Assembly (NCBI GenBank): GCA_964270895.1
Contig: OZ185450.1
DNA from: Podarcis filfolensis
Taxonomy: Eukaryota
Direction: 5' to 3' (one strand)
DNA length: 64,000 nucleotides
Shown: positions 24,521-47,139 of the stretch, one piece after another
How the letters are laid out: each line of letters begins with the position of its first letter
How positions within the stretch are numbered: position 1 is the stretch's first letter
Translations under genes and position numbers: made by a program
The notes under the pieces: generated by a model
Told to the model about the DNA's origin: nothing
What the model saw: only the letters and a program-made list of their open reading frames with translations
Databases searched by the model: none

Positions 24521-25278
24521 TATTACATGATAGTTGTCCAGTTGGTTATTTATATGTACCTGCCCTTTCCTGCTCATCTTGTGTGCTCAGGTTGAGAAGA
24601 GTTCCTACTTGATTGATACACCACTGCATATATTGGAGTATCACTTCTGTTTAGGTTCTTTGTCTCAGAAAGAGCTGCATACCTTTAAACCTCTGACTGA
24701 ACTTATACAAGCATGGAATATGGTATCTAATTGTCCATGAGTTTGGAGTTTTTCCTGGTACTGCCAAATTGGACTTGAAAATGTAGCATGCGGCCTTGTG
24801 AATTCTTGAAATAGAAGGAAGTGTTTCAGGAACTGTGGTTTCAATATTCTGCTTTGATCCTGGTGTGTCTTGATAAGTGGAAAGAGCAGGATGATTGATT
24901 ACGCAGATCTGATTAACTTACTCAAGATGCAGGATTTGGCACAGAATGTTGATTCTTCTAGCTTAGAATACATATAACCCTGATTCAGGCTTCAGAATGG
25001 ATGGCTTGTATACTGTCAATCAAAGATCAATGGAAAAGTCCTCCTTTTAAAAAACAAAACTGAATCCCAGATAGCACTTGCTATGACACCACCCATCAAG
25101 CTACCAATTAAAACTCTTGTTTTAATGACGGAAGTTTCGTATTTAATTACAAATGTTGGTTACTTTTATTGCCAAGTATTTTATAGCACTCTTCGTGGGT
25201 TTTAGAGGAGCTGAAAAAATAATGAAGTTACTTGTGGTGGCTTGAAGAATCATTTGAAATTTGGATTTCAATTTACAG

Positions 25279-25365
25279 AAAGAATGGAGGGAAGATAGAA
25301 ATGGAGAATTCAAAAGGAAAGTTGCCCGCTGTGTAAGAAAAAGCCAAGAGACTGCTTTTGAGTGA
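25279..25365 (+). CDS. UBE2G1: UBE2G1 last coding exon (exon 5)
   Basis: atttacag|AAAGAATGG...GAGTGA; KEWREDRNGEFKRKVARCVRKSQETAFE*. The exon continues 39 nt to a donor CAGG|gtaagt at 25404/25405. Confidence 0.97.
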   Translation, partial: KEWREDRNGEFKRKVARCVRKSQETAFE

Positions 25366-28137
25366 CACTTAATTCAGCAGCTAGTAGCTTCACTTTTTTT
25401 CAGGGTAAGTAGGGTTTAAAATTTTTTTAATGGAAAATTCCATTTTGCATTGGAAAATCCAGAACGTGTTTGTTACATGTTGAATGCTCAAGGCAGTGAG
25501 GTAAGTATTCACGTTCTACAAATGTGTATTTCCTCTCTCTCTCTCTTCTGCATTTATTCAGCAGATAAGATTTTGTTTTCCTTTATTGCTAGGAGATAGT
25601 TCTTTAATGTTCAGGCCAGATTATTTTATTATATTTATATATTGTAGTATTTTCATATTTTACACACACACCACAATTCTCCCACTCCAGTCACAAAAGG
25701 CTCCTAAAACTGAAATTAGAGCACCATTTCCTCTTTAAACAAAATTTATATACTGACTGATGGAGGGAGAACCCTCTAAGTAGTTTACAACATTATAAAA
25801 CATTAAAACAATTAAAAACAGTTCTGAAAAATAATCAAAAGGTGATAAAAACCAGTTGTGGCTGAAAAGAAAACGCATGTAACTTCTACACGTCGGGATA
25901 GCGTTGGCTAAACAAACATGTTTTAAACATTGCATACAGCACTGGAGTTTTGGTACACATGATAGAACACTGTCCATAGCCCCAGTCCCTGAAAAATCCA
26001 AGCAAGAGCCCAAGTGGTATAGTTCGCTGTGCGAACCCAGTCTAAATCCCTGCTCAGCAGCAGAAGCTACTTGGGGTAACGTGCTTACTGTGCTGTGGAA
26101 ATAAGGGGCGGTGTGGGAGAGGGCCATGTATTGTCACACTTCCCTTCCTTGGAGGGAAGAGGGAGGTTAAAAAAAATTGCAGCTCCACAAGCTCTAGCTG
26201 AGTGTACAAGGAGCAGAACCAGACGACGCTGTGGCTTAGGTACTGGGTCCCAAACCTGGGGCCTGAACCTGTTTCAGAAGTCGTTTAAAAGACACATAAA
26301 TGTCAAAGACTAGCCCACGTACTTGGAGATACTTACAAAACCCGAGAATATTGCAGCCTTCTAGCTTTTTGTTTCCTCAAAGACAAAGTACTGGTGTCAG
26401 GGGCTCGGTGAACAAGTGGGGAACACTAAGCAGGACTGGACACTACTGATATCTCCATGCAACACCTGGTTATAAGTAAAGTTATAACTCTTATCCCACC
26501 CCTGCCCCCAGCAAAAGAAGTAGTCGTGGTGTCTGGAAAATGTCAGCTTTTCAGCAGAAGCCTATTTGCCTAATATAACTCCAGTAGTACACTCCAAAGC
26601 TAAGCCATCCTGCATGAATGGAACATGTTTTGCTTAATAATTTGTGCCAGAGTTGGTAAAACATTAGTCTCTGTTGCTTGTATGTGTCTCTGTAGCACTT
26701 GTGGTTACTGCTGATGGTAATCCTGCAACTGATGATTTCCAAAGAATCTTGGTGTTGCCAGCTGAAAACTAAACATGCAGCTTTTGATGTATGTATATGA
26801 GAACTAGCTGTTTTTGGTAACTAGGCTTCTGCTTGTCTGTGTTGGCAGATATGCCCCTCACCCCAGTGGTTGAACTTTGCACTTGGCTTTATTAAATGTT
26901 GAGTTAGTCCCCTTTCAAGATTCCCTCAAACACTCCGTTGGGTATGGGGTGGTCATTGTGGGTACAGCCTTAACGGGACACTTCATATCTCTAATTTTGG
27001 GTTTGGGGGTTGCTTTTCAGTTATGCAGTCAGTGAGAAACTTATTGGGCAGTAAGCCTTCCAAATGCAGGGATATCTTAGCTGAGTTGTGTGGCCTGTAC
27101 AAAAAAGCAATCCCACCCATTTGCACATTGTAGAGGACTACTGCATGTGCCATATAAATGCTTGTGTCTTTTGCCTGTAATGAAAGTTTTACTGCAGGCA
27201 GATTTCCTCTCTGCAGCTGGCATGTTATTGCCACTGACGGTTTGAGTTGCCAAACTACCATTTTGGCACAGTATATTGTACTGCTACTCCCACTTACTAT
27301 TGATGCTTTTGGGATGCTTAATTTTAGTAGCTGCTGAGGGGAAAAGAAACCCTACTAAGTATTGTAGCTGAGTTGGTTTGACAACTAAGGTTATAGTGTT
27401 CTTGGTTTCAGCAAGTGAGCCCTGAAGCCCTGATACTTCAGCTCCCATTGCTCTTGCTGTAAATAAGTAAGATGCTTTTAATTGGGCAACAACCTGCTCA
27501 AAGTATACAAATTTGTAAGTTTCACAGAAATATTTAATGAAATAATGGGATGTAGCACCTAAAGGACACTGATGTAAAGAACAGACTCTCCTACACACTC
27601 AGTTGGTAGATGGAGCAATCTTTTTGAGTGAGCTGTTCCTGTCAGAAGTGGCTAAAAACGTGTGGCTGAACACAACTTTGCTGAAAACACAGGTTTTTCA
27701 GTGATGCGTCTTTTGTAACTTGAACATTCTGATGTATTTCATCAGGGCAATGCTGCCAACTTGATGTGCCCCTCAACATGTTTGTTTTTTAAATGGGATT
27801 TGCAGAAGATCAAACCATAGTTTTTAATTTAGGAAATGGCAGTTAAAGTTCATTTGAATCTCTGTAAAATACTTAAGTACAGAAGATGCTCATTGTGTTA
27901 GTATTCTAGTTGTGTGCTCCCTGTAGGACTGGCCTCTGGAAAGCAACCCTAGAGCAAACCTAACTGGGGCTCTGAACAGCAGTTCAGATGCTGGTACTGA
28001 GAGTTCTCACATCAGCCTATCTTGGAAGCACTCGCTACAGAGAACTTTCTTTTTCGGTCTGCTGCAGCCTGTCATTTGATGATGCCATGAAGACTAGATC
28101 TAGTTTGGCTGATGGTTCTTTGTTCTTACCTTTGTAG

Positions 28138-28665
28138 GTCTCCAATTGAGGAACATGGCACTGTTTTTCCTGCACTCTATCCACCTAATGCTGGACTTCT
28201 GTTTATACCAAGTTGGCAGACACTGGCTGGAACTGGGCTGCAATAAAACATGCCAGTTATTAATGCTGACAAAGAGCCTAACAAGTGCCAACAAGGATTT
28301 GCGCATTTTGAAAACTAATGGAACTGCTTTAACCTTCAGGAAGAATTGTAAAGATGTGTACATAGCACAACATGATCCGGATAATATATACTGTTCATGT
28401 ACATCCACAAATACACATTGTACCAAATAATGCTGTCTTGTAGTTAGAATAAGAATCGTGTAAATTCTAAAGATTTTTAGCAGGTTTTCCATTTTTCTCT
28501 TCTTCCCCCCTCCCTGGTTTTCCCTATGAGTCTTTAAAATTTCTCGTGAAGCATGTCAGTCTAAAACAAATTAGGATTTAAAAATTCTGTTTTAACTTTT
28601 TCTTTTCAGCCATTGAAGATTCATTAAAATCTCTCACTTTAATAAAGTTTAATACCTTTGTAATG
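28138..28665 (+). other. UBE2G1: UBE2G1 terminal non-coding exon (3'UTR); 3' end uncertain, may extend further
   Basis: Acceptor ttcttacctttgtag|GTCTCCAATTGAG. Repeat-free AU-rich sequence that resembles my recollection of the mammalian UBE2G1 3'UTR start (needs alignment). Confidence 0.75.
28641..28646 (+). terminator. Candidate UBE2G1 polyadenylation signal
   Basis: AATAAA at 28641 preceded by ATTAAA near 28623; other AATAAA at 28242 and 28974. Usage cannot be determined from DNA. Confidence 0.4.
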
Positions 28666-31600
28666 CTGTCCCTTCCCCCTTACCTTTTTTTCAGATTACA
28701 TAAATACAACACAGATCTATTACTTGATTCTAATGATGACTTGAGCACTGTCATCAGGAGGTGCAGTTCCTTCCCTTGCATTATGACCCAGCTGTGCTCA
28801 TCTCTTGGCTTGGATGTAGCAATAAGATTTTACAGCTGTGGAGCACCCTTGAGCCTGTTATCTTTCCCAAAAGGGTTGAGAGCATTTGTTTTGGAAGTGG
28901 TCAGCTAAGTATGTTAGCCCAATATAGGATGAACTGCTTTCTTTTGATTTCTTGCCTGGTTTGAAGTTGGATAAATAAAAGCATGCAGAGCTGTAGGCTT
29001 TCAAGTGAGTTCTGGTTTTGCTATCAAATGCTATTTCCCTTTCCCTCTTCTTCCTCTTTCCCCCCTCTTTATATTTCTTTGCCTTTTGATCTCCTGCAGG
29101 TTTTCCTCACTTAATGTATAAAGACAAATTGCGATGTATATTTTCATGTAACTTGATTTTGGAATTCTGTCACCTTCTGTAGTGAGTTCTTCCAAAATAT
29201 AAATTTTTCCAATAGCTTGGTGTCAAGTTGGCTGTTATGCAGTATAAAAAATGAGAGCACATTTTCAGAGAGCATTAAGCATGAAGATGCTGGTAGCCGA
29301 TGGACAACAACTGCTTGAGACTTCATCAAAAGGTGACTCGTATTCTTGGAAACTGACTTCTAAGGAGTTCAGTGAACCTCCATGGAAAGTGACTGTAACC
29401 TGATAATGCAGAAGATAGAAAAAATGCATTGAATTTTGCTTTCGTTGAAATACTGAGTGGTTGTTCCTTTGGAAATTAACTGTTCACATAAGCCAAAGTT
29501 GGACAAGTATAATATTCAACTGTAGACTCAGGGTGTTTCCAGACCGGGGATTAATTTGCAAACAGGTTATAGACAGCCATGGTTATTTTATTTACCAGGT
29601 TTTTCCTGGGGAGAGTAAATGGGGGAAGGAAATGTGGGCTGGTATTTTGATGCTAACTTTGTGTGGACACTATAAAAAAAAAGCATGCCTGAAGAGCACT
29701 GATTCTGCAGTCAACACCCATCCAGCAGCACCCTTTGATATGGAGGAAGAATAAATAAAATGACCATACTGATAGGGAGGGGGGTGGCACCATTGCAGAG
29801 GCCCTTCTTAATGGCAAAACTCCTTGCAACAATGGCTTTATGTTCTGGGCCAGTGTAATCTCTCCTCATTTGAGGCATTTAATCTTGCAATGTTACATTC
29901 ACTGTAGGATTTACTTGTAGGCTTCTTTGGTCTTTTCGTTCTGCAGCAATTTGTTTCTGCTGTTTACAGCAGTGCTTCAAAGGAGTGGCTGGAGGCAAAT
30001 TGCTTGCTTTAATTCTGAATCCACAAAGGAATAGTAGCAGCCTCCCTATGGTATAATGTGGGGGCAGGTGGCACTTAGGCTGAGTTACATGACACGAACG
30101 AAAAAGTACACACAGGTCCCTAGTAGTGCTGCATCATGCATTTGCCCCTGCAGTTCTTGACAAAACATACTAACTGCCCTCATTTTACAGTGACAGTACA
30201 GCCTCTGATGCCATGTAAATATCCTTCTGGTAGAAGGAAACATTTGTTAACATAACAGAGGGACTGAGTTGAATGGGTCTTCTGTGGCTTTTTTGTTGAA
30301 CGCAGTTAATTGCATTGGGTTTGAATGGAGGGATCTATGTGCTTGTAAAGCAACCTTTAAGCAGAAGCACTTTTATAAGCAGTGGGCCAGACCTGCCTGC
30401 TTTCAGGGCTACCATTTCAAACAAAAGGAATTATGGGGAAGGGGGGGGGACATATGGTAGGTTTCAGAGAGGAAAATAGTGTACCAGTTATGAATGCCAG
30501 GGGAATCACCATTGGTACCTGCCAATTAGAAGAAATAACAATTAAATCCTGAAATAGAGGTAGGGAGTTCTTGCCTCTGGATTTTCTTTAAAAGCAGCAA
30601 TGTTTTGTCCTATTTGTCTGGGTACATGCAGCAGCATAAAGTTACTCTAAGCTGCTATGAATTAGAAATGGTACTTAATTAAGTGCTCTCTTTTTAGCCA
30701 GACAGATGTATTTGCTGCTTCTGAGCTGTTTAGTACCCAGACACAATAGCTGGATTTAGACAATTGCTCAAACAAGAACCAAAATTGTTTGGCTCCTGCT
30801 GAGGTGGGGGGAGGAGAGTCCTTGCCAGCCAGCTGGCTAGCATTTGTTCTCTTCTGCTTGCGTAAGACATTGGGGGGGGGGGGACGGTTGTCTTACATTT
30901 TGGCCATCTATTCCATAATTAAAATATGAAGGGAAATATCCCAGTGATTCTAGGGCAGCTATTGTGATCCAAAAGGCGGCCAGCTGGATGTGGAATAATA
31001 AGGTCTCCCAACTTGCGTCTACACAAAGCATTCACTTATTTGTCCCTTGAACACAAGCTGCACTGCAGTGATGGCAGTTTGAGAGGCAGGAGAATTTCTC
31101 TTGTCACCTTGGGTGAAGCAGGGCTGAGCAGAGAACCCAGCTGGATTGTGGGAAAGCTTTGACTTTTCCATTGGAAGTGGGCAGGGGAGGGGGGCTAGGA
31201 GAGAGCAGGCATCTAACTCTTTTGTCAGTTCTAAAGGATCCAGAATGGTTTGGGAGGGGTTGCTGGGGGATATTTCCCACTTCAGACAAATTAAACCACA
31301 TCTTTTTGAAGAAGCTGTCAAAACTTTTAAGGCTAAAATCTAATTGATCATTGTGTTATATGAAGTTACAACATTATTTTGTGCTTGCTTTTATAACAAG
31401 TTGTGTCCTGGCTACTGCTGGCATTAGACTTATTCTTTGGTTCTGAACATGTCTGCTTAAATCTGTGTTGTGGTTGATTGCAAGTGCTTACACTGTTACA
31501 CCATTTAAAGGACTACTGTGGAAGAGTTCCTGTTATTGGTTGGTTGGTGACCAAGAAGAAAATGCTAATGCAGCAGTTTGACACCACACACACACACACA

Positions 31601-32041
31601 CACTTTGAGACAGATGGATGCCAGCAAGGTGACAACTGCATGCTTTTTTCTTTTGTTGGAAATAAGCTTGGTTTCTTTTTTCCAAGCTCACCCCTAGAAC
31701 AGTTATTCAGAAATGGGAATGTCTCTCCTATTCTTCCTTCAGGGCCTGATAGATGGCTGTTAAGAGTGCAGTTCTTGGGATATTAACCAGCTTGTTTAAA
31801 AGGTTTATCTTGCCTTGTGGAGGTTTACAGGTCACTGCACAAACTGCAGGAAAGACTGACCTGTCTCTGTTAAGAAGGGTATATTGGTGGGCATAGGAGG
31901 CAAGATGTCAGCTGGATCCAAGGTTCAGTAAAAACATCTCTTCCAGTCCTGACTTTTTTAATTCATTTGTATCTTGTCTTTCAGGAAGATATTTCCATTG
32001 CTTATCTTACTAAAAGTGTGAATAGTAAAAAGAAGCTTGAA

Positions 32042-32229
32042 GGGTTTTAGCTCAGTGGGAGAGCATCTGCTTTGCACGCAGAAAATGCTAGGTTCAATTC
32101 CTGGCATCGCCAGGTAAGGCTAGGAAAAACTCCCGTGTCTCTGAAACACAGGAGAGCCAATCAGTGTGAACAATACTGAGCAAATGGACCATTAAATCGG
32201 CTTGGTATAAGGCAGCTTCCTGAGTTCTT
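32042..32229 (+). mobile_element. tRNA-derived SINE (Squam3-like), near full length
   Basis: tagctcagtgggagagcatctgctttgcacgcag...ggttcaattcctggcatc head; 3' end ...gtataaggcagcttcct. Confidence 0.75.
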
Positions 32230-32731
32230 AGGAATGTCATAGACCACTTCAATTTATAATTTTAAAAGCAGTACCTAAGTACGCATGCAGACCATAGGGA
32301 TTATGATTTTGAGTATTGCACTACAAGAAAATGTCTTCAGCGTATCTAAAGACCTGTCAGATTTCCTCAGGGAGTGACACCACTGAAAAGCCCTATCCCT
32401 TGTATCTGTAAATTTAATTTTGGTGTCAGATATCTGGTCCTCCACAGGCAATCATGGGGCCAGTTCACATCAGTGTAAAAGTGGTGGAGAATGTGTGGTT
32501 GTCCGGATATTGGACCTCGGTTCCCATCATTCATGACAATGGGCCAGAGTAGTTCAGGCAGGATGTAAATAATTTTTTGTACTCTGACTTTAGGGTAAAC
32601 ATGGCACATTTCATTCTCTGTTTTGCATTGGATGTAGCTGGGGTACACAGCAAACTTCTGGGAGAAGCTTTTTCATCACTGGCTACTATGGAAGTATGTG
32701 CAGGAATTATTCTACTGTACTGAAATACTAA

Positions 32732-32903
32732 CGGCGTTCCGTGTGCTGCTCTGGTGCCGGTTCGCCGGAGCAGCTTCGTCACGCTGGCCACGTGACCCAG
32801 AAGTGTCTGCGGACAGCACTGGCTCCCGGCCTCTAGAGTGAGATGAGCGCACAACCCTAGAGTCTGTCAAGACTGGCCCGTACAGGCAGGGGTACCTTTA
32901 CCT
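32732..32903 (+). mobile_element. 5'-truncated Sauria-type SINE (divergent subfamily)
   Basis: Aligns by eye to the 3' half of the 35351 copy; (CCTTTA)n tail; 14-bp direct repeat TACTGAAATACTAA at 32718 and 32904. Confidence 0.8.
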
Positions 32904-32919
32904 TACTGAAATACTAAAA

Positions 32920-33420
32920 TGTGAATACATGCTCTGGCGGATTGAACAAACGAGACCAATAGTGGGTCCAATGGTAAAGAAGGCTGTTTCTGCATGTGCT
33001 GTAGAAGAAAGTGAGGGGCAGATGAGGCTTGTCAACCTGGGAAGGTAACCCATCTAGGAGAAGGAAAACTGATCCTAAACTTCTACTGTCTTGCACATCT
33101 TCAGAAGAAAAGGCTAAGGAATAAACCCTGCAGAAATCCAGAGTGGACTTCCTAACACGATTGAATGTTGCTTTGTATGCCTCCTTCTGGCAACTCCTGC
33201 CAAGTTGGTGCCAAAACATATTGCTCTGCTTTCCTTTGGACCACATCAGTGAAGCCGAGAGGTGGGGTTTGTCATCTGGGCAACCCAGGACCTCTGTTCG
33301 CACTGCCCTGGCTGCATCCCAGGGAGGTTACTTCGGTGCTGGTAACACAGCGGTTTGACCTCCAAAGGCACACTCCATCTGTCTGTCTCTTGAGTCAGAC
33401 AGATGTCAACAGCAACTACT
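32920..33420 (+). mobile_element. Probable RTE-related interspersed repeat
   Basis: Contains cccatctaggagaaggaaaact...taaac and ends in a caacagcaactact-type tail; recognised from memory only. Confidence 0.35.
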
Positions 33421-34088
33421 AATGGAATTCAATGGGATACTACAAAGAATGTAGTATTCCTTCTTCCCAATCTGGAAAATATTAGGATTGGATAGCATAT
33501 TAAAGATCTAGACAACTCTTGGCACAATCAAAACAAATTTTAGGTAGTCATGTTGGCCACTAGGAAAAATGAAAATGCAGTAGCAGCATCATACTTCCTG
33601 TGAGGACTAATAATCCTCACAGTTCACTGAAACTCTGAACTTGGGTTTGCTCCTTTTCAATCTTACTTTGGTCCTAATGTAAAGTTCTACTGTAGTGTTG
33701 CTTTTGGATTTTGGCAAATGCCACAGAGGCCCAAGTCTGTAATAAGAGACATAATTAGTAGTGTAGTCTGTATGCCTACACAGGAGTAAGCTCCATTGAG
33801 TTCGGTGGGACTTATTCTCAGGTACATAAAAGGATTGCAGTGTTTATCAGAAACCCTTTTTCTTCCAGATTTTGTACTACTACAAAGGAGTGGAGATAAA
33901 TGTTTTAACACTTAATTGTTCTAATTTTTATTTTTCTCCATCGCTATTCCTGTTATTGGCACACAACTTACAAGTTTACAGAAAAGATTTTCTCTCTCCC
34001 CCCCCCCCCCCGTACAGGACAGGGAGAAGCAGAATTTAATTTTTACACACACAAAAACAACATGTAAAGACTTGGTCTATATGCAAAT

Positions 34089-34384
34089 TTTATTATTCTG
34101 TTTCTAAAACCAATCCAAAGTTACTTAAAAAACGGAGGTCAACAGCACACAACATTAACTCCACCAAGGATTCAGGGCTCCCTGCATGTCAGGTCTGTGG
34201 TGGCTTGAAGACTCCTCCTTGCAGGGCTTCTCTTCTCTCACATCACTCCCAGGTTCATCTGCTTTCTGTCGCTCGGGGCCTTTCTTTGGGAGTATCTACC
34301 TTCTTGTGCTTCTCACTGTGGATTATTCTCTGTTCTTTCCTGTCCCTGTCTGTGGCTGTCTGGAGACCTAACTCTCGCATGCTC
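34089..34384 (-). pseudogene. RBMX2: Disabled 3' coding tail and 3'UTR of the RBMX2 retrocopy
   Basis: After the TAG (34387-34385) the frame continues EHARVRSPDSHRQGQERTENNPQ to a second in-frame stop TGA (34315-34313) in R/S/E-rich sequence. Minus-strand AATAAA at 34094-34089. Confidence 0.6.
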
Positions 34385-35074
34385 CTACTTAGACTCCCGT
34401 TCATGTTGTGCCCAGCTTGCATGTTTGTGCCCAGATGTGCTACTCCAGATCTGCTGACTCGCATTGGCATTCCATTCATACCTTGGGTCTTCCTTCTCCA
34501 CTTTGATCTTGGTTTTAGGAGGCGAGTCTGCAAGCTGTTCCTCTTTCACCCGTTTTTGGTGCTCTCTTTTCTCTTTCTTCTCCTTGCTTTTCTCTTTTTT
34601 GTGTTTCTTTACCACCACCTCACTGTCTTTGGGGGACTCTGGTGAACTTGGAGGTGTTTTAGCACCACATCCTCTTTCTCGGAGCGCTTTTGTCACATCA
34701 TCAATATCCTCGGAGTCTTTCGGTGGGCGGTAGTTAGCCACATGGTCCACACGAATTGTCCTTCCTTTAATCTTTATTCCATTAAAATTATCAACCACAA
34801 GAATGGTGCTTCTCTGATCTTCATAGCAAATGAAACAGAAGCCTTTGGATTTCCCTGTCTTCTTATCACGCACCAGATTTATGTTCACAATTTCCCCATA
34901 CTGTGAAAACACACAAACAATGTCGCCTTCCGTCAGCTCATAGGGAAGACCACCCACAAACACCCAAGCACTGTCACTGTACTCTGCATGCCAGGAGACC
35001 TTATCTTGTACACCAAGCTGTGCCTCACGCTCATTCAGCTCATTGATCAGCTTCACTTTGGTTAGTGGATTCAT
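34385..35074 (-). CDS. RBMX2: Intronless RBMX2 retrocopy ORF (229 aa; intact RRM, truncated tail)
   Basis: MNPLTKVKLINELNEREAQLGVQDKVSWHAEY...GGLPYELTEGDIVCVFSQYGEIVNINLVRDKKTGKSKGFCFICYEDQRSTILVVDNFNGIKIKGRTIRVDHV is unmistakably RBMX2 (Snu17/Ist3 family). It is continuous, without the introns of the vertebrate parent gene. Whether it is expressed is unknown. Confidence 0.9.
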   Translation of the reverse strand: MNPLTKVKLINELNEREAQLGVQDKVSWHAEYSDSAWVFVGGLPYELTEGDIVCVFSQYGEIVNINLVRDKKTGKSKGFCFICYEDQRSTILVVDNFNGIKIKGRTIRVDHVANYRPPKDSEDIDDVTKALRERGCGAKTPPSSPESPKDSEVVVKKHKKEKSKEKKEKREHQKRVKEEQLADSPPKTKIKVEKEDPRYEWNANASQQIWSSTSGHKHASWAQHERESK

Positions 35075-35350
35075 GCTGGTTCTCTTCGTCTATTGTGTGC
35101 AAAAAAAGAAAAAGAAAAGAAAAAATATTTTTAAAACACTCATAAAAATTTACTGACCTTTCAAAAGCCCCGTTAGGTAGCAAATGCATTTACACTTCTG
35201 TTATGGCAGCGGAGTGGCCATGTGTTCTAATTTACAGAAGGCAGCCTTCTCTTTTCTCTCTTTTATTATTACTTATTGCACACCCCTCAACCTAAGGTCC
35301 CTGGGTAGATTGCAACACAATACTGTATTAATATTAAAGCACAATATTTA

Positions 35351-35693
35351 GGATGCGGGTGGCGCTGTGGGTTAAACCACAGAGCCTAGGGCTTGCCGAT
35401 CAGAAGGTAAGCAGTTCGAATCCCCGTGACGGGGTGAGCTCCCATTGCTCCGTCCCTGCTCCTGCCAACCTAGCAGTTTGAAAGCACGTCAAAGTGCAAG
35501 TAGATAAATAGGTACCACTCCGGCGGGAACATAAACGTGCGCTGCTCTGGTTCACCAGAAGTGGCTTAGTCATGCTGGCCACATGACCCGGAAGCTGTAT
35601 GCCGGCTCCCTCGGCCAATAAAGCGAGATGAGCGCCACAACTCCAGAGTCGATCACGACTGGACCTAACGGTCAGGGGTCCCTTTACCTTTTT
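35351..35693 (+). mobile_element. Full-length Sauria SINE
   Basis: tRNA-like head ggtggcgctgtgggttaaacc...ggttcgaatccc, (CCTTTA) tail, 10-bp TSD ACAATATTTA. Confidence 0.9.
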
Positions 35694-35714
35694 ACAATAT
35701 TTAAAACAGATTGA

Positions 35715-35880
35715 AGTATCGGACTACAGCCTGGAAGGCCACAGTTCAAATCCTAGCTCAGCTAGGAAGCTCAACCTGAGTGGCTTTGGGCCAGTCCCTG
35801 CCTCTCGGCCTACCTCACAGGGTTGGTGTGTTGAGGTTAAAAATGAGGGCGCGGGAGGACCACGTACGCCACCCTTGAGT
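35715..35880 (+). mobile_element. MIR-like CORE-type SINE remnant
   Basis: gttcaaatcc...ttgggccagtc...cctacctcacaggg core; related copies at about 36610-36760, 51300-51520 (-) and 59355-59531. Confidence 0.6.
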
Positions 35881-36236
35881 ACATAAAATAAAAATATGCT
35901 CAGAGAGGCACTTTGGCCATGGCCTCGCTTTTAAAAGCAAGACAAAACTTCCTCTCCAGTCAGAGGTGGTGGTACTCTGCACGTGCTCAGAGGCACATCG
36001 CCCTCGGGGCGGGAAAGGAAGACCTCGGAGAAGAACGCGCGGTGTAGAACTGTTCCTTCGAAACCCGAATTCGGTCCTCCTGCAGCTTCTTCCCAGCGGC
36101 CATAACTTCAGCCCAGTCAGGAAGGCTGTGCCGCTACTGCGCGCGCGCGCGCACCGCCTCCTTTTCTCTCCTCCCCCCTCCCTCCCCGACCCACCCCGCT
36201 CTATCTCGCCCCTCCGCCTCCCGCTCTCACCTCAGG

Positions 36237-36246
36237 TCTCGCGAGA
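36237..36246. promoter_or_regulatory. Palindromic CGCG element TCTCGCGAGA (BANP/ZBTB33-type motif)
   Basis: Exact match TCTCGCGAGA ending 28 nt upstream of the ANKFY1 ATG. Confidence 0.75.
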
Positions 36247-36273
36247 GCTCCGAGGCAGCGGCCCAGGGCCAAC

Positions 36274-36283
36274 ATGGCGGAAG
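36274..36283 (+). CDS. ANKFY1: ANKFY1 (Rabankyrin-5) exon 1 coding part
   Basis: gccaacATGGCGGAAG|gtatgc, strong Kozak context; joins exon 2 to give MAEEEVAKLEKH. Confidence 0.9.
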
Positions 36284-36609
36284 GTATGCGCGATGCGGGC
36301 GGCGGCGGCGGCGGCGGCAATGCCAGCTGCACCTTGAGGAGCGGGAGGGTTTTTTCTCCCACCTCAGGCGGTTTTTCTGTGGGGCGGAGCGCTTAGCTAA
36401 CAGTGGTTTTGGTGCTGCTGGGTTGGTGCGGGGTGGGGGCAGATTGAAACCGGCTTGGAGGGCGGGGGGGGGAGTGTTTGGGCGTGCCTCGTTTATTTGT
36501 GTTAGTATTTTATTTAACTCTATTCCCTCCCGAGGAGATCGAGGCAGGATAGGTGGACCTTTTCCCCACCCCCGTCTTATATCCTCACAAGAGCCCTGGG
36601 AGGTAGGCG

Positions 36610-36760
36610 AGGCCATAGTGGTGCAGCGGTTAGAGAGAATGTGGACCAGGGCTTGGGAGAGACCTGGGTTCAAATCCTCCCCACCCCACGCCTCCAACTC
36701 GGCCAAGTGACCTTGGGGGCAGGTCACAGCCCCTCAGCCTGACCTACCTCGCAGGGTTTG
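36610..36760 (+). mobile_element. MIR-like CORE-type SINE in ANKFY1 intron 1
   Basis: gtggtgcagcggttagag...ctgggttcaaatcc...gtgaccttggg...cctacctcgcaggg. Confidence 0.65.
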
Positions 36761-37169
36761 TTTTATTGGCGCCGTAAAATTTATAGACCATTGATTTTAA
36801 AAGGCACGCAAACAAAAAAAAAAGCACGCAAACACACACACATCAAAGCAGTTTACAAAGGATGAAATACTAAAATATAGAAAAATTCACAACCCTGCCT
36901 TCAAAATACAAAAGTTAAGATAACTGAAGCAGATTAAAAGTATCTCGGCTTTCTGGGTAGACTTTTAGCAGGTGCCAAAAAAAAAGAGTACGGTGAAGGC
37001 GCCTGCTTGTTCTCAATAGGCAGGGAGTTCCAAGGTGCACTAAAGGATCAAGCTCTTACAAATACGGAACGGGTATTATGTGGCATCTGTAAGTACTGCT
37101 GATTCCGCTGATCAAAGCCATTGAGTGGGTGCACATCTGATAAAGTAAACTTGTGCCGAGTTGTTGAGG

Positions 37170-37390
37170 GCTTCATATGCCAATAGTAACACCTTGAACT
37201 TGGCTCAGTAGCAAATTGGCAACTAGTGCAGGGCTCTGAGCACAGGTGTTATGGGTTGACGATGCCTTGCTGCTGTCAGCAATCATGCTGCAGCATTCTG
37301 CATGAACTGCAACTTCCAGATCAGGAGCACATTGCAGTAATCCAGTCTTGAAGTAATCGATGCATAAACTACTGTGGCAAGGCAAGGGTT
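37170..37390 (-). mobile_element. L2-clade LINE ORF2 fragment
   Basis: Minus-strand translation ATVVYASITSRLDYCN...KLQFMQNAAA is the typical L2 RT C-terminal motif. Confidence 0.8.
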
Positions 37391-40300
37391 GTGAGGAGGT
37401 CGCCTGGGAGTGAGTGTTACTTGGCCCTGGGTGGGGTGTTGTATGTATGCAGTGGGGCGTGAGAGAGACTTTTCCAACAACTCTTTCTGCTTGGTGAGTT
37501 AAGTAGAAGCTTATGTGTGGAAGTAGAGGAAGACTATCTTCCTAGAAAGGAGGTGTTTCTTTGAAATGGGGGAGTCATAGTGGCATCACTCCACCCCTGT
37601 ATGCATGCACCCACCCACCCACTTAGGAACATAAAGAGTCTGCCCTATACAATGTCACTTTCTACACTGACTGGTGGTAATGGTGTGTCCATTTGTCTAT
37701 CCTATCTCCTGGCATCTAGTGCTTTTAATTGAACCTAGGACCTTCTACATGAAAAAGTGTAGTTGGCCCCACTGAGTTACATGTGGGTAAATCCATACCA
37801 TAGATTTAAACTGCATTCAGCAAACACTTAAAGCACACAACCTCCGCCCTCCAAATAATCATGGGAACTGTAGTTTACCCCTCACAGATATACCATTCCT
37901 TATCAAACTATAGTTCCCAGGATTCTTTGTGGAAATATATGTGCTTTAAATGTGCTCTGGGTGTGTTTTTAATGTATGGTGCAGATCTGCCAGTCTCTCC
38001 CTCTAGTTGCCTACCAGTAGCAGCTTTCTAAGAGTCCAGTGGAAAATGCCATGGATTGAACCTGGCACCTTCTGCATTCAAATTCTGTGCGTATGACCCT
38101 TCCCATATCTCAGCTGCTTAGAACTCAGCTTGTTGCCTCGATTGTTAGTACTGTATCCCCTAAACAACTTCAATTAAGGCATACATTGTTTCCTGCACAC
38201 CCACAACAGCACAGCGGCTTTAAGACACTTTAGTAACTCTTCTGAACTTTTTGTAAAGGATTACAAAAATCACCTCCATATTATTTTGTGTATTCATGTT
38301 GCTTTTCTGTAACGTGTCTCTGCCCCAGGGAGAGTGCAGTCATTGTTATTATTTATACAGTACCCTCAGTGTGTATGGCCCTTCACAGAGAAGGCTGCCC
38401 AAGAACTGAAGTGGTGCTAGATCCCACCCAAAGCTGGGATCTACTTAGTAATAGTAGTCATGGCCCATGGGGTCCTTGGTGTGCATGCTATTTTACAGAG
38501 GCAAAACAAGGCAAGGGAAGGTTCTTGCTGGAAGAGATTCGTTCTGTTATGCATAACGCAGTCCGTGTGCTTGGTGCTTTATAGAATTACAGCAAGACAA
38601 CAGGTCTCTGCCTGAAACAGCTTACAATGTAAAAGTCTAGAGGTGGTGTGGAGGATGGAGGCAGAGGGGGAGGCAGGCTGAAGCCAAGGTTAACAGTGGG
38701 GAGGAATGTGCACTAGGTTTACTTGTATCTATGTGGGCTTCATTTCACTAGGAGATAAGAACTAAGGAACTTTGTGAAAGCATCCATAAAAAGTTAGCCT
38801 TTGGTGAGGGATATGAACAAAAGCAATTAAAAGCAAAGGGAAGTTTATTCAGTTGTTTCTTTTGCAGAGGATAGGAAGATGAGGGATCCTAGAATTGTAG
38901 AGTTGCACAGGCCCACAAGGGTCATCTAGTCCAACCCCCCCCCCCCCATGCAGGAATATTTTTGCTGAACTTGTGGCTCAAACCCACAACCCATCTCATG
39001 GATGTTTCCTTGAGCATTGGGGTTATGTGTGTGGTAGGGAGGGCCCTTGAATGTACTTGTTCCTGGAAAAATATAGCAGAAAATGTATGTAAGGGTTTGT
39101 ATTTCTTTTCCTTGAAGGAGCTTGGGGTGGCATACATACTTATCCCTTCTCACCTCTTATTTTCCTCCCTGCAAATCTCTGAAACAGGTTAGGTTGAGAA
39201 ACAGTGGCAGGTTCAAGTTCGTCTGGTTAATTTCATGGCTGATGTGGGATTTTGACCCAGCTCTTTCCATTTGTGGAAGGTTTCAGTGACATCAGTGAGT
39301 CTTCATTGGTAGTAAATGCACTTAGAATAGGGTGTTGAGTTGCATGAAGCAACCTAGGTTGCAGTGCTAAACAAATCCAGCCCAATGTACTATTTTGTAA
39401 ATATGTTTAAGACTACAGCTCATGTCATATTTTCATGGGGTCCTGTTTAAGGCAGATTTACAGACATGAAGTCCAATTTAGTTCAGTGGGGCTTCTCCCT
39501 AGTTAGTGTGTGCAGGATTGTGGCATTAGATTTAGAAAGGACTAGCTGCCAAGTAAGTGACCATAAGATTGCACCCATACCTAAATGCTAGTCTCACCTC
39601 AATGAATGAATGACCATTTCTTTAGGATCGAGCTGTTCAGTTGCATATCCAAGAACATGGTTTACTATCTTATTAACTATCTTAGTTTGGATGTGATGCT
39701 GAGCCAAGGAATGTGGTGTGTTTCTTCTGTGCTCTTGCGAAATGCAAATAGTTTCTGATTTACTGTGACATGCAAACAAAGTCACAGATTGCATATCCGT
39801 TTAGTAAATTTTTATTTGCTTTCCATATAGTCATTTCACTTTCCTGGGATGTTCAGAGATGACTTGGATTTTTTAAACAGTACTGAAAATTGTGCAACAC
39901 CTACATGTGATGATCTGGCAGATTTCACTGACTTCCTCTCACAGCCAGAGATCTGTCCACGCAGTTTCATTTCTCAGAAAGTTTTCTTGGGAGAATAAGA
40001 AGAACCCAGGTCTTCATAATGAAGAGACCTGCTTTTAAGGTTTCTTTCCCCTCAAATTTCTGAAGTGTTTGTCTTTGGTTGGTTTGCCCTCTGTGCCCTG
40101 GGTGAGCAAATGGTAGTAGATAAATAATCACAACAAAGTGTGGGTGGGCAAGTTTTTCCAAAGTAAATAGGACTTGGCTTAATGGTAAAAAGCTGTTGAG
40201 GCACTGTTGTGCAACAGTTTGGACTGCTGCCCACTTAAAGAAGTTACTTAGTTTATTGAGTAAATTGTTTGAATATGAATAACTGTGCACATGAAGGAGC

Positions 40301-40653
40301 AGTTCTGAAGAAAAACATATACTTCCCTGTTTTTAGATAATAGATATGTTACAGCAGTTAAGAGACATTCCCACTTGTGTTTGAGAAGAGATAAGTCCTC
40401 TAGTAAAAACACTAGCCATTTGCACCAGCTATATTCAAAATAAGGCTTCAGTTCTTTAGTTGATTGAGCCATTAAAACATGCTTTTTAAGTTAAAAAGGG
40501 GTTGTTTTAACATTCCATCCTCAGTCTGTGTCACTGAAGAACTGTATGTGTCATCTTTGAATATCAACCAGGCTGGAAAAATCCCATCTGGACATCTAGA
40601 GATCTCTTGCAAAAGTCTTCAAATAGAAGGAGATAAACTTTAGCATTGCCCTA

Positions 40654-40990
40654 AATGTGGGTGGCGCTGTGGGTTAAATGACAGAACCTAGGGCTTGCCG
40701 ATCAGAAGGTTGACGGTTTGAAACCCCGCAACGGGGTGAGCTCCCGTTTCTCGGTCCCTGCTCCTGCCAACCTAGCAGTTCAAAAGCACGAAGTGCAAGT
40801 AGATAAATAGGTACTGCTCCGGCGGGAAGGTAAACGGCGTTTCCGTGTGCTGCTCTGGTTTGCCAGAAGCGGCTTAGTCATGCTGGCCACATGACCCGGA
40901 AGCTGTACGCTGGCTCCCTCGGCCAGTAAAGCGAGATGAGCACCGCAACCCTGGACCTAATGGTCAGGGGTCCCTTTACCTTTACCTTTA
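40654..40990 (+). mobile_element. Sauria SINE
   Basis: Highly similar to 35351-35693 with a small internal deletion; three tail repeats. Confidence 0.9.
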
Positions 40991-41384
40991 ATAGTTGCAG
41001 TCAAGCTAATGGTATAGACCAGCCTTCTCCAACTTGGTAGCTACCAATCCCTGACCATTGGCCATACTGGATGGGCAGATGGAAGCTGGAGTCCAAGAAC
41101 ATCTACAGCTCTACAGTTTCCCCAACCCTTGCTTTAACAAATGGTTTATCTGCTGGCCAGCTAAGTAGTTGGTTTCTACAAGAAGCAACCACAACCTGCT
41201 CTGAATATATCTAGAGATGCTGAATGCTCTGCTGCAGATGAAAGCATTCCATGCAATGCCTAACTATGCATTATTCAGTGAAAGTTCCCTGATCAATACT
41301 GGTATCCTTCACTGCCTTAAAGTGATGGTGTGTGATTTTCTTGTAAAGCTTTTGGCTTTCTTAACCATGAAAGGTAAATTCTAT

Positions 41385-41515
41385 ATAGAATCATAGAATT
41401 GTAGAGTTGGAAGGGACCCTGAGAATCAACCCCCCTGCAACGCAGAAATATGCAGCTGTCCCATGTAGGGATCAAACCTGCAATCTTGGCATTATCAGCA
41501 TCACACTCAGAATAA
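41385..41515 (-). mobile_element. tRNA-headed SINE with CR1-derived tail
   Basis: catagaattgtagagttggaagggacc...ccccctgcaacgcag...gggatcaaacctgc; related copies at about 38899-39000 (-), 46876-46982 (+) and 56202-56270 (-). Confidence 0.6.
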
Positions 41516-42899
41516 CCGGATAATATAGTGGCAGTATTTAGATTGCAAGACTTCATTCTCCTTTTTTCAGTCCAAACTGAAGGACTCCTGGGAAGAGTTG
41601 CGGTTGAGTTTGCTTGGCTCATTTTGTTTGTTACAATTATTCATATTCTGCCTTTCAAGGTTGCTGAGAATTAAGATTGAACTTCATTAAAACATGCACA
41701 CACAATAAACAGCATGAAACTAAATGATTTGATTGTGGCCAAGTGCAGTAGTTAATATGGAAGGCAGCTGTTCCAGGATGCTTAAGGACCATGCATGGAG
41801 TCACTACTCACCAGTATTTATTGAATAGGGAATCCCTGCCCGTGTGCATCCTTTGTAGAGTTCCTTTTACTGTTAAACATACCTTGCTGGAGCCTGCACA
41901 GGATCCTGAGGTCTAAGGAGACATCATGTAGGGGCTGGTCAAACCAGAACAGGGTGCAGGGATTGCCTCTTGATGACCCTGGGGAGTGGGTGCAGAGTTC
42001 AGAGTGGCATACTGGCAGGCTATACCACTGGAACACCCCCTTCCTGCCCAGTATCCAACTCCTCATTGATAACCGACTATTGAAGCATCTCCTTTCACTC
42101 ATGGCCCTGACGCAGTCTGTTCCAAACCACTGGGCCCCTTCCCAGGGTCGTTTGCAGGCAGCTCCTCCAGCTGTGCCCCCCCCCCCCGTCCAACCAGCCC
42201 CTCCACGATGGCTCTTTGGGACTCATGACACACAGTTCTCAACTGCTCAGCAAGCCTTTCTTGCACACCCGGTCCCCTGCTCCAGGTATAACCTCAATTC
42301 TGGTGTAACTTTTAAAATTGCAGTTGCCTTTAAAATATTGGTAACCTCCTTCCTAAGAATAAATGCTTGGTACGGAATAAGTATACTACCAGAGTCTTGG
42401 ACTAGATTTGTAAGGATCGTGTTAGATGATTCAGAATTTCTTTGTTAACGTACACCTACTTTGCGATGTCAGTTCTTTATATCTACAACCAGTGTAAAAT
42501 GTGAATGGTGATCTTAGCCAAGCCTTGATGCATTTGCTAGCAGCGTATCAAAGCACAGTTAATGCCACATATCTGGCTTTTTAGCAAATCTTGCTGGCTG
42601 GTACTTAATGGAAACAATTAGTCATTCTTGGTGGATTTGACAGCATAAAGATCAATGAAGAAAGCCTCTTTAATGTCATCAGATGCAGTGTATTGATACA
42701 ATAACTTAGCATACACCTCCCCCACTATGAGGGTTGTTGAAGTGCAGCCTATAGCCTCAGACTTCCTTTATCATTGCTCATTTTGAAGGGTATCAAGTAT
42801 AAAAGCCAGGACGTTCCTTAGGCCTCCTACCTGAGATCCCCAGAGATGCCACGGAAACTGTTTGGGTCTCTTTAGGGACAAATTGTGATGGCAGCATGA

Positions 42900-43345
42900 C
42901 TGAGCTGTATGAAGTTATGGGTGGCATAGAGAAAGTGGACAGAGAGAGGTTCTGTTCTCCCTCTGTCTCCCATAATACTAGATCCCAGGCTCATCCAATG
43001 AACTGAACACTGGAAGAATCAAGATAGACAAAAGGAGGTGTGTCTTTTCACTGCACATGGTTGCACTATGGAATTCGCTCCCGCAAGGCATGGCTGCCAA
43101 CTCAGATGGCTTTAAAATGGTGTTAAGTCAAATTTATGGGGAGGATTAATACTATCAGTGGCTGCTAGTCATGGTGGTTATATATTGCCTCCAGTATCAT
43201 TGTTCATATACCTCTGAATACCAGTTGTTAGGGCTCATTACTGGGAGACTGCTGTTCCACACATCTCCTGCTTGTGACTGTGAGAATGTAATGCTGGATC
43301 GGATGCATCGCTGGTCTGAGCCAGCAGGTTCTTGGAGCAGCCTTC
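42900..43345 (+). mobile_element. CR1 LINE 3' fragment
   Basis: Decayed EKVDRE...RTRGH...DKRK...LWNSLP-type C-terminal coding sequence followed by 3'UTR. Confidence 0.65.
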
Positions 43346-44983: not shown

Positions 44984-45176
44984 AAGAGGTGGCCAAACTG
45001 GAAAAACATCTGATGCTTCTCCGTCAGGAATATGTCAAGTTGCAGAAGAAGCTGACTGAGACGGAGAGGAAATGCACTCTCTTGGCCGCTCAGTCTAACA
45101 AGGAGAGTGCCAGCGACTCCTTCATCAGTCGGCTGCTTGCCATCGTAGCAGAGTTGTATGAGCAGGAGCAATACAG
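44984..45176 (+). CDS. ANKFY1: ANKFY1 exon 2 (N-terminal coiled coil)
   Basis: ctttgcag|AAGAGG...TACAG|gtaaac; 193 nt, EEVAKLEKHLMLLRQEYVKLQKKL...LYEQEQY. Confidence 0.96.
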
Positions 45177-46982: not shown

Positions 46983-47139
46983 NNNNNNNNNNNNNNNNNN
47001 NNNNNNNNNNNNNNNNNNNNNNNNNNNNNNNNNNNNNNNNNNNNNNNNNNNNNNNNNNNNNNNNNNNNNNNNNNNNNNNNNNNNNNNNNNNNNNNNNNNN
47101 NNNNNNNNNNNNNNNNNNNNNNNNNNNNNNNNNNNNNNN
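46983..47139. other. Assembly gap (157 N)
   Basis: Run of n in the sequence. Confidence 1.

What the first reader, a model, noticed from the sequence alone, without database searches (positions are those of the whole stretch)
35074..36283. Head-to-head RBMX2 retrocopy and ANKFY1 around a CGCG-element promoter
Seen: the two ATGs point away from each other 1.2 kb apart across one CpG island containing the palindrome TCTCGCGAGA. A Sauria SINE and a CORE-type SINE lie between them. Established: this motif is a methylation-sensitive activator site in CpG-island promoters and has been associated with bidirectional initiation. Inference: normally unstable upstream-antisense transcription from ANKFY1 may have been converted into a lineage-specific mRNA that converges on the UBE2G1 3' end.
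Basis: partly seen in the sequence, partly recalled or inferred. Interest (0 to 1): 0.7.

Follow-up and report, generated by a model that had tools for sequence, protein, structure and literature searches.

The report
Lizard RBMX2 retrogene beside ANKFY1 promoter
Wall lizards and their relatives keep an RNA-derived, selectively preserved copy of the splicing-factor gene RBMX2 back-to-back with the ANKFY1 promoter, a known way for such copies to become expressed; whether it really borrows that promoter could not be tested here.

Summary
The geometry is real. An intronless RBMX2 copy lies on the minus strand (about 35127-34046; ORF 35074-34385, 229 aa). It faces away from ANKFY1 exon 1 (ATG at 36274, donor after 36283), with the two ATGs 1,200 bp apart. 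TCTCGCGAGA occurs once in 64 kb (36237-36246; none in shuffles). A SINE with a 10-bp target-site duplication sits between the genes.

One part is overstated. The CpG island covers only about 35950-36500. It ends about 840 bp from the retrocopy, whose own 5' flank is CpG-poor.

New evidence:
- The copy fuses all six parental exons.
- It sits at the same locus, with the same TAT-to-TAG stop and 2-bp deletion, in Podarcis muralis, P. raffonei, P. lilfordi and Zootoca vivipara.
- Codons 1-135 (RRM) show omega about 0.18 (P=3e-4). The tail evolves neutrally.

It therefore behaves as a functional lacertid retrogene, already annotated in RefSeq as "RBMX2-like".

Some sequence features argue against a simple unspliced antisense read-through: 11 upstream ATGs and a conserved AATAAA. 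A spliced leader or a local promoter remain open. The UBE2G1 3' UTR ends at least 4.7 kb away. The parent gene is probably Z-linked.

The parts
34046..35127 (-). Processed RBMX2 retrocopy: 5'UTR remnant, CDS, 3'UTR and poly(A)-signal region.
   Evidence: blastn to the P. raffonei parental gene L002 gives six collinear blocks that equal its six exons, at 84-94% identity, with all five introns absent. The 3' homology ends just after the parental AATAAA.
34385..35074 (-). 229-aa ORF including the stop codon. The TAG at 34387-34385 replaces parental TAT (Tyr230) and removes the last 50 residues.
   Evidence: The same stop and a 2-bp deletion just after it are shared by all five lacertid copies.
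34670..35074 (-). Codons 1-135 (N-terminus plus RRM), under purifying selection.
   Evidence: Within the retrocopy clade there are 11 synonymous and 7 non-synonymous changes, omega about 0.18, binomial P=3.4e-4. Fixed differences from the parents are 8 synonymous and 1 non-synonymous. The five-species variable fraction is 0.040 against 0.105-0.15 in introns and intergenic DNA.
34388..34669 (-). Lys/Ser-rich tail, codons 136-229, evolving neutrally.
   Evidence: 5 synonymous and 31 non-synonymous changes, omega about 1.4. Variable fraction 0.111.
34089..34094 (-). Parental AATAAA poly(A) signal, retained in the retrocopy.
   Evidence: It aligns with the parental 3'UTR signal.
34035..34062 (-). 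TG microsatellite plus a short A-rich stretch where the poly(A) tail should be. A 7-nt TAAAAAT (34045-34039) repeats at 35134-35128 and is a possible target-site duplication.
   Evidence: The sequence is low-complexity, so this is inconclusive.
35075..35127 (-). 5'UTR-derived segment: a pyrimidine tract (an expanded parental T-run) followed by AG at 35091-35090, 15 nt before the ATG. This is a candidate 3' splice site.
   Evidence: It is a candidate only, with no RNA evidence.
35135..35193 (-). 59-nt block directly upstream of the retrocopy with only 2 variable sites among five species. It contains the donor-like AAG|GTCAGT (exon end at 35158).
   Evidence: Roughly 6-9 variable sites would be expected at the 0.105-0.15 neutral level. 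This is suggestive but not significant once the many windows examined are taken into account.
35262..35267 (-). AATAAA hexamer on the retrocopy strand, between the island and the retrocopy. A hexamer is present here in all five species.
35351..35693 (+). tRNA-headed (Sauria-type) SINE, with the target-site duplication ACAATATTTA at 35341-35350 and 35694-35703.
   Evidence: It is present in the window species, P. muralis and P. raffonei. P. lilfordi and Zootoca have an exact empty site. There are 3 more copies in the window.
35712..35875 (.). Older SINE-like repeat shared by all five species. It contains the donor-like GAG|GTAGGC on the minus strand (exon end at 35814).
   Evidence: The family was not verified.
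35950..36500 (.). ANKFY1 CpG island (GC 0.56-0.69, CpG o/e 0.81-0.99).
   Evidence: Its five-species variable fraction is 0.117, no lower than in introns.
36237..36246 (.). Palindromic CGCG element TCTCGCGAGA. 27 nt separate it from the ANKFY1 ATG.
   Evidence: It is identical in P. raffonei, P. lilfordi and Zootoca, and reads TATCGCGAGA in P. muralis.
36274..36283 (+). Coding part of ANKFY1 exon 1 (ATGGCGGAAG), with the GT donor at 36284.
44984..45176 (+). ANKFY1 exon 2, in frame with exon 1.
25258..25365 (+). UBE2G1 last coding exon and stop codon. The conserved 3'UTR-like block runs to about 29265.

Best explanation
An mRNA of the multi-exon RBMX2 gene was reverse-transcribed and inserted about 0.8 kb upstream of ANKFY1, in the opposite orientation to it. 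RBMX2 encodes the RES-complex splicing factor and is probably Z-linked in lacertids. The insertion happened in an ancestor of Podarcis and Zootoca. The copy lost its last 50 residues to a nonsense mutation but has kept its N-terminus and RRM under purifying selection. It therefore acts as a truncated RBMX2 paralogue, i.e. a retrogene. It brought no promoter, only about 40 nt of 5'UTR. Its transcription most likely starts on the minus strand at the upstream edge of the ANKFY1 CpG-island promoter, whose conserved TCTCGCGAGA element is known to fire in both directions. The transcript probably reaches the ORF through a spliced 5' leader. Candidate donors are at 36231, 36195 and 35814, and the candidate acceptor is at 35091-35090. 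The transcript would end at the inherited AATAAA (34094-34089). Shown here: the retrocopy origin, shared locus, selection, geometry and motif conservation. Inferred: expression, use of the island, splicing of the leader and Z-linkage of the parent.
For: Retrocopy origin: six parental exons are fused. The parent lies on a different chromosome of the same assembly, CM049769.1 against CM049764.1. One ancient event: the copy sits in the same place between UBE2G1 and ANKFY1 in P. muralis, P. raffonei, P. lilfordi and Zootoca. All share the same TAG and 2-bp deletion. dS between retrocopy and parent is 0.18-0.23, against 0.085 between the Podarcis and Zootoca copies. Function: omega is about 0.18 in codons 1-135 (P=3.4e-4), there are 8 synonymous and 1 non-synonymous fixed differences, and the RRM varies 2.5-3.5 times less than neutral DNA. 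No promoter of its own: only about 40 nt of parental 5'UTR are present and the flank is CpG-poor. Nearby promoter: the ANKFY1 island lies 0.5-0.85 kb away in every species, and the CGCG element is conserved in 4 of 5. Literature: the element drives divergent start sites a few tens of nt on each side and is methyl-sensitive (PMC6192621). Expressed retrocopies head-to-head within 2 kb of a gene are treated as promoter piggybacking and are co-expressed with that gene at r about 0.6 (PMC4772013). Insertions of 353 bp in three Podarcis and about 250 bp in Zootoca are tolerated in the spacer, as expected for an intron or untranscribed spacer.
Against: The island stops about 840 bp from the retrocopy (about 490 bp without the SINE). 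The minus-strand path holds 11 upstream ATGs. One of these opens a 49-codon uORF that overlaps the main ATG. The path also holds an AATAAA present in all five species about 150 nt before the retrocopy. The island itself is no more conserved than intron DNA. P. muralis has a mismatch in the motif yet keeps the ORF. No retro-type protein from Lacerta agilis is in the protein collection.
Confidence: 0.5

Rival explanations
1. The retrogene is functional but runs from its own small, CpG-poor promoter just upstream of the insertion (about 35130-35340). This might include a 68-nt 5'UTR mini-intron (donor at 35158, acceptor at 35090). The neighbouring ANKFY1 island would then contribute at most open chromatin.
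For: The 59-nt block 35135-35193 is the best conserved non-coding stretch in the spacer, with 2 variable sites. It contains a consensus-like donor that is identical in all five species. A/T-rich TATA-like sequence lies at 35125-35135. A start site below 35143 would give a leader free of upstream ATGs. The conserved AATAAA at 35267-35262 would stop island-derived antisense RNA before it reaches the copy.
Against: The conservation of a 59-nt block is not significant after allowing for the many windows examined. No recognised promoter element was demonstrated. In mammals, head-to-head retrocopies this close to a CpG island usually share its promoter (PMC4772013).
Confidence: 0.3
2. Transcription comes from elsewhere. 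Possible sources are a start site inside the shared old SINE-like repeat or the Sauria SINE, or a distant alternative exon spliced to the acceptor at 35090.
For: Transposable elements often donate promoters and donor sites. A conserved donor-like site lies in the old repeat at 35814.
Against: The Sauria SINE is absent in two species that keep the ORF and lies in the opposite orientation. There is nothing specific to support a promoter in the old repeat.
Confidence: 0.12
3. The copy is a non-functional processed pseudogene. The low divergence of its RRM part would then reflect gene conversion from the parent, a mutational cold spot, or a DNA-level (regulatory) constraint.
For: The copy has a premature stop and a frameshifted remnant of the tail. 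The tail and 3'UTR evolve neutrally. L. agilis has no annotated retro-type protein.
Against: The synonymous to non-synonymous ratio is far from neutral in codons 1-135 (P=3.4e-4 and 3.6e-5). This argues for constraint at the protein level. dS to the parent is uniformly about 0.18-0.23 in both the RRM and the tail, so there has been no recent conversion. The 229-codon frame is intact in four Podarcis genomes (window species, P. muralis, P. raffonei, P. lilfordi). In Zootoca it is 226 codons, shortened only by in-frame changes.
Confidence: 0.06

Closest known systems
Promoter 'piggybacking' by head-to-head retrocopies (Carelli et al. 2016, PMC4772013; example HTR7P1 beside HEBP1)
   Same: An intronless mRNA-derived copy lies within 2 kb of a protein-coding gene, pointing away from it, next to that gene's CpG-island promoter. 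The copy carries no promoter of its own.
   Different: The known cases are mammalian and backed by CAGE and co-expression data. Here the species are lizards and no transcript data could be read. The island ends 0.5-0.85 kb before the copy.
CGCG element / BANP-type motif TCTCGCGAGA in TATA-less CpG-island promoters (Mahpour et al. 2018, PMC6192621)
   Same: An exact 10-bp palindrome sits inside an island next to a housekeeping-type gene start and is conserved among species.
   Different: Activity, methylation state and start sites are unknown here. Only 27 nt separate the motif from the ANKFY1 ATG. The reported sense starts at +28 to +51 would therefore fall at or beyond the ATG, so the real ANKFY1 start is probably upstream of the motif.
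RefSeq 'RNA-binding motif protein, X-linked 2-like' of Podarcis muralis and P. raffonei, and the 226-aa 'RBMX2' of Zootoca vivipara
   Same: These are orthologous genes with 89-93% protein identity to the window ORF. They sit at the same locus and have the same premature stop.
   Different: Those entries are automatic annotations. I found no paper that describes the gene as a retrogene or discusses its promoter.
Out-of-X retrogenes of mammals, such as the RBMX-derived RBMXL1 and RBMXL2 (cited from my own knowledge, not checked here)
   Same: An RNA-binding-protein gene on a sex chromosome homologous to the mammalian X spawns an autosomal, intronless, selectively kept copy.
   Different: Here the sex chromosome would be a Z in a ZW system, the gene is RBMX2 rather than RBMX, and Z-linkage is inferred only from chromosome size and published synteny.

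Membership tests
Processed retrocopy / retrogene | Collinear with the spliced parental mRNA, with all introns absent | tested here: met
   Six exon blocks are fused. The parental introns in L002 and L006 were mapped.
Processed retrocopy / retrogene | Located away from the parent gene | tested here: met
   In P. raffonei the copy is on CM049764.1 (45.1 Mb) and the parent on CM049769.1 (51.5 Mb).
Processed retrocopy / retrogene | Poly(A) tail and target-site duplication | tested here: inconclusive
   Only a TG microsatellite and a short A-rich remnant are present. There is a 7-nt TAAAAAT repeat at both ends, in low-complexity sequence.
Processed retrocopy / retrogene | Retrogene status: ORF kept under purifying selection | tested here: met
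   Omega is about 0.18 in codons 1-135, P=3.4e-4. The tail is neutral.
Processed retrocopy / retrogene | Transcribed | not testable with these tools
Bidirectional (head-to-head) promoter pair | Divergent start sites less than about 1 kb apart (2 kb in PMC4772013) | not testable with these tools
   The start sites are unknown. The ATGs are 1,200 bp apart here, and 846-1,186 bp apart in the other four species.
Bidirectional (head-to-head) promoter pair | One CpG island spans both gene starts | tested here: not met
   The island covers about 35950-36500 only. The retrocopy's 5' end at about 35127 lies in DNA with CpG o/e 0.34-0.48.
Bidirectional (head-to-head) promoter pair | Co-expression of the two genes | not testable with these tools
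   No expression data could be reached.
CGCG-element promoter | Exact TCTCGCGAGA inside a promoter CpG island | tested here: met
   The motif is at 36237-36246 with 0 expected by shuffling. It is conserved in 4 of 5 species.
CGCG-element promoter | Unmethylated, and drives divergent initiation | not testable with these tools
   This needs methylome and start-site data.
RBMX2 / Snu17-type RES-complex subunit | N-terminal region plus a single RRM of RBMX2 type | tested here: met
   RRM_1 matches at E=1.9e-21. Residues 1-135 are 97-99% identical to the lacertid parents.
RBMX2 / Snu17-type RES-complex subunit | Full-length basic C-terminal tail | tested here: not met
   The protein is truncated at codon 230 of 279, and the remaining tail is neutral.

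The most novel reading that the evidence does not exclude
A Z-linked splicing-factor gene of lacertids, on the chromosome homologous to the mammalian X, exported an autosomal retrogene. That retrogene has survived for tens of millions of years by converting ANKFY1's CGCG-driven upstream-antisense transcription into a spliced mRNA. Another report of this scan, not checked here, describes an NXT2 retrogene in the same genome. Together they would point to out-of-Z retrogene traffic in a ZW vertebrate, mirroring the out-of-X traffic of mammals.
Probability: 0.2. Interest if true: 0.6.

Novelty: new member of a known kind. Interest (0 to 1): 0.35.

Why it matters
If the retrogene is transcribed from the ANKFY1 island, it would be a clean non-mammalian example of a promoter-less gene copy rescued by divergent transcription. 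Natural variants are ready for testing. P. muralis carries a point change in the CGCG element. P. lilfordi and Zootoca lack the 353-bp SINE. Zootoca has a different 250-bp insertion in the spacer. If the parent is Z-linked, the case also bears on whether genes leave the Z in ZW vertebrates as they leave the X in mammals. The gene is already annotated in related species and the mechanism is a textbook one, so a specialist would find this interesting but not surprising.

Tried and rejected
No transcript start, end, splice or expression level could be examined.
- Transcript contigs in the protein collection: the retro-type cluster has no member from run assemblies. The ubiquitously needed parent has only one 59-aa fragment, so this absence says nothing.
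- The Ensembl 255-aa P. muralis model merely splices over the stop codon and gives no 5' information.
- ARAGORN finds no tRNA gene in the SINE head. The SINE call rests instead on its target-site duplication, copy number and an empty orthologous site.
- Gene conversion as the cause of RRM conservation was rejected, because dS to the parent is about 0.2 throughout.
- A CpG-island promoter of the retrocopy's own was rejected.
- 'SINE needed for expression' was rejected as a requirement, since the ORF is kept in species without it.
- Outgroup loci (Lacerta agilis, non-lacertid squamates) could not be fetched. That would need a joined ANKFY1 or UBE2G1 protein as a query. The parental RBMX2 exons were joined only inside scripts, for codon statistics.
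- The N run at 46983-47139 was left untouched.
- Literature search for an RBMX2 retrogene found nothing relevant.
Full report
WHAT IS THERE. The window comes from a lacertid lizard. Its DNA is 92-97% identical to Podarcis muralis over the 19 kb of the window (25000-43922) that aligns to locus L001, and the retrocopy region is closest to P. raffonei.

On the plus strand lie UBE2G1 and ANKFY1. The last UBE2G1 coding exon is at 25258-25362, with the stop at 25363-25365. ANKFY1 exon 1 is ATGGCGGAAG at 36274-36283, followed by GT. It joins in frame to exon 2 at 44984-45176, giving MAEEEVAKLEKHL. P. muralis annotation uses the same ATG.

Between the two genes, on the minus strand, is a 229-codon ORF at 35074..34385. 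It carries an RRM (Pfam RRM_1, E=1.9e-21). Its best matches are RBMX2 and "RBMX2-like" proteins.

IT IS A PROCESSED RETROCOPY. The stretch 35113..34060 aligns in six collinear blocks to the six exons of the multi-exon P. raffonei RBMX2 gene, at 84-94% identity. All five introns are missing.

The copy includes about 40 nt of the parental 5'UTR, among them an expanded T-run. It also includes the whole 3'UTR up to and just past the parental AATAAA at 34094-34089. Where the poly(A) tail should be there is a TG microsatellite and a short A-rich remnant. A 7-nt TAAAAAT repeat at both ends is only a possible target-site duplication.

The parent lies on another chromosome of the same assembly.

IT IS OLD, SHARED AND SELECTED. 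The copy sits at the same place, between UBE2G1 and ANKFY1 and divergent from ANKFY1, in four other genomes:
- P. muralis (L001)
- P. raffonei (L004)
- P. lilfordi (L005)
- Zootoca vivipara (L003)

All five copies share a TAT-to-TAG change at parental codon 230 and a 2-bp deletion just after it. The truncation is therefore ancestral. dS between copy and parents is 0.18-0.23. It is 0.085 between the Podarcis and Zootoca copies and 0.066 between the Podarcis and Lacerta parents. The insertion is thus roughly twice as old as the Podarcis-Zootoca split.

The selection results differ sharply between the two parts of the ORF:

| Region | Changes within the retrocopy clade (syn / non-syn) | Omega | Binomial P (omega<1) | Fixed differences from parents (syn / non-syn) | Five-species variable fraction |
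|---|---|---|---|---|---|
| Codons 1-135 (N-terminus + RRM) | 11 / 7 | about 0.18 | 3.4e-4 | 8 / 1 | 0.040 |
| Tail, codons 136-229 | 5 / 31 | about 1.4 | 0.82 | 3 / 2 | 0.111 |
| Retrocopy 3'UTR | - | - | - | - | 0.121 |
| ANKFY1 intron 1 and the spacer | - | - | - | - | 0.105-0.15 |

Uniform dS to the parent rules out recent gene conversion. The copy therefore behaves as a retrogene encoding a tail-less RBMX2 paralogue. Selection implies that it is expressed.

RefSeq already lists it as "RBMX2-like" in Podarcis and as "RBMX2" in Zootoca. I found no paper on it.

THE PROMOTER QUESTION. The palindrome TCTCGCGAGA is at 36237-36246. It is the only copy in 64 kb, with none in 100 shuffles. It is conserved in P. 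raffonei, P. lilfordi and Zootoca and has one mismatch in P. muralis.

Mahpour et al. show that this "CGCG element" is methyl-sensitive. They also show that it drives divergent start sites a few tens of nt on either side (PMC6192621).

Carelli et al. treat expressed retrocopies lying head-to-head within 2 kb of a gene as cases of borrowed bidirectional promoters. Such pairs are co-expressed at r about 0.6, and piggybacking accounts for about 11% of expressed retrocopies (PMC4772013). The arrangement here belongs to that known class.

- The CpG island spans only about 35950-36500. It ends about 840 bp from the retrocopy's 5' end, or about 490 bp in species without the SINE.
- The DNA next to the retrocopy is CpG-poor.
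- The island is no better conserved than intron DNA.

On the minus strand, between the island and the ORF, there are 11 upstream ATGs. One opens a 49-codon uORF that overlaps the main ATG. An AATAAA at 35267-35262 has an equivalent in all five species. A plain unspliced antisense read-through would therefore make a poor mRNA, and by the U1/poly(A)-signal logic it would tend to end early.

Features that could rescue it:
- A long pyrimidine tract followed by AG at 35091-35090, 15 nt before the ATG.

The 59 nt at 35135-35193 are the best conserved non-coding stretch of the spacer, with 2 variable sites. They could equally mark a small local promoter or first exon.

THE REPEATS BETWEEN THE GENES. 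The SINE at 35351-35693 has a 10-bp target-site duplication. It is present in the window species, P. muralis and P. raffonei. P. lilfordi and Zootoca have an exact empty site. It is therefore not needed to maintain the gene. Zootoca has its own palindromic insertion of about 250 bp at 35193. These tolerated insertions suit an intron or an untranscribed spacer better than a translated-mRNA leader.

My weights are 0.5 for initiation at the ANKFY1 island (probably with a spliced leader), 0.3 for a local promoter, 0.12 for another source and 0.06 for a pseudogene.

As a result, outgroup ANKFY1/UBE2G1 loci, including Lacerta agilis, were not fetched.

UBE2G1 CONVERGENCE. The orientation is convergent. 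However, the conserved UBE2G1 3'UTR-like block ends near 29.26 kb. The retrocopy carries its own poly(A) signal at 34094-34089. The two 3' ends are therefore at least 4.7 kb apart, and no overlap is predicted.

SIDE RESULT. The parental gene's chromosome is 51.0-51.5 Mb in three Podarcis assemblies. That is the size reported for the Podarcis Z (PMC12860763). The lacertid Z is homologous to chicken 4p and the human X and includes mbnl3, which from memory is a near neighbour of RBMX2 in humans (PMC6534595). The retrogene is thus probably an "out-of-Z" copy. This is an inference and was not tested.

VERDICT. This is a new member of a known kind, of moderate interest.

Noticed in passing
L002:8001-12542 (P. 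raffonei parent); L006:3001-7392 (L. agilis parent): The multi-exon parental RBMX2 lies on a 51.0-51.5 Mb chromosome in Podarcis, the size published for the Podarcis Z. The lacertid Z is the homologue of the mammalian X. The retrogene is therefore probably an out-of-Z copy.
   Followed up: partly
window 35341-35703: The SINE insertion is present in P. raffonei but absent, with an exact empty site, in P. lilfordi. These two species differ by only 1.2% left of 35074 but by 3.6-4.7% to the right of it. This suggests a genealogy switch (incomplete lineage sorting or introgression) at the retrocopy's 5' end. The three orthologous SINE copies differ by about 7-8%, more than their flanks.
   Followed up: partly
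L003, inserted at the point corresponding to window 35193: Zootoca carries a palindromic insertion of about 250 bp (MITE-like) in the spacer that the Podarcis genomes lack.
   Followed up: no
window 35040-35189, minus strand: A 49-codon upstream ORF starts at 35189 and overlaps the retrogene ATG out of frame. If the putative 68-nt mini-intron (35157-35090) were removed, it would instead end in a TGA that overlaps the main ATG.
   Followed up: no
protein P0124 (Ensembl P. muralis, 255 aa): An automatic gene model removes the shared stop codon by a small artificial intron and adds 26 residues. It should not be taken as evidence for a longer protein.
   Followed up: partly
cluster of P0001: No retro-type RBMX2 protein from Lacerta agilis is in the protein collection, although its parental RBMX2 is. 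The copy may be broken, lost or simply not annotated there.
   Followed up: no
window 34002-34015: A run of 14 C (G on the retrocopy strand) lies just beyond the retrocopy's 3' end. Its length and sequence vary among the five species.
   Followed up: no
window 46983-47139: A run of 157 N lies in ANKFY1 intron 2.
   Followed up: no
L005:17530-20690: P. lilfordi annotation gives UBE2G1 a 171-aa product whose range reaches about 2.8 kb further downstream than in the other species (to about window 28170). This is possibly an alternative last exon inside the 3'UTR region.
   Followed up: no
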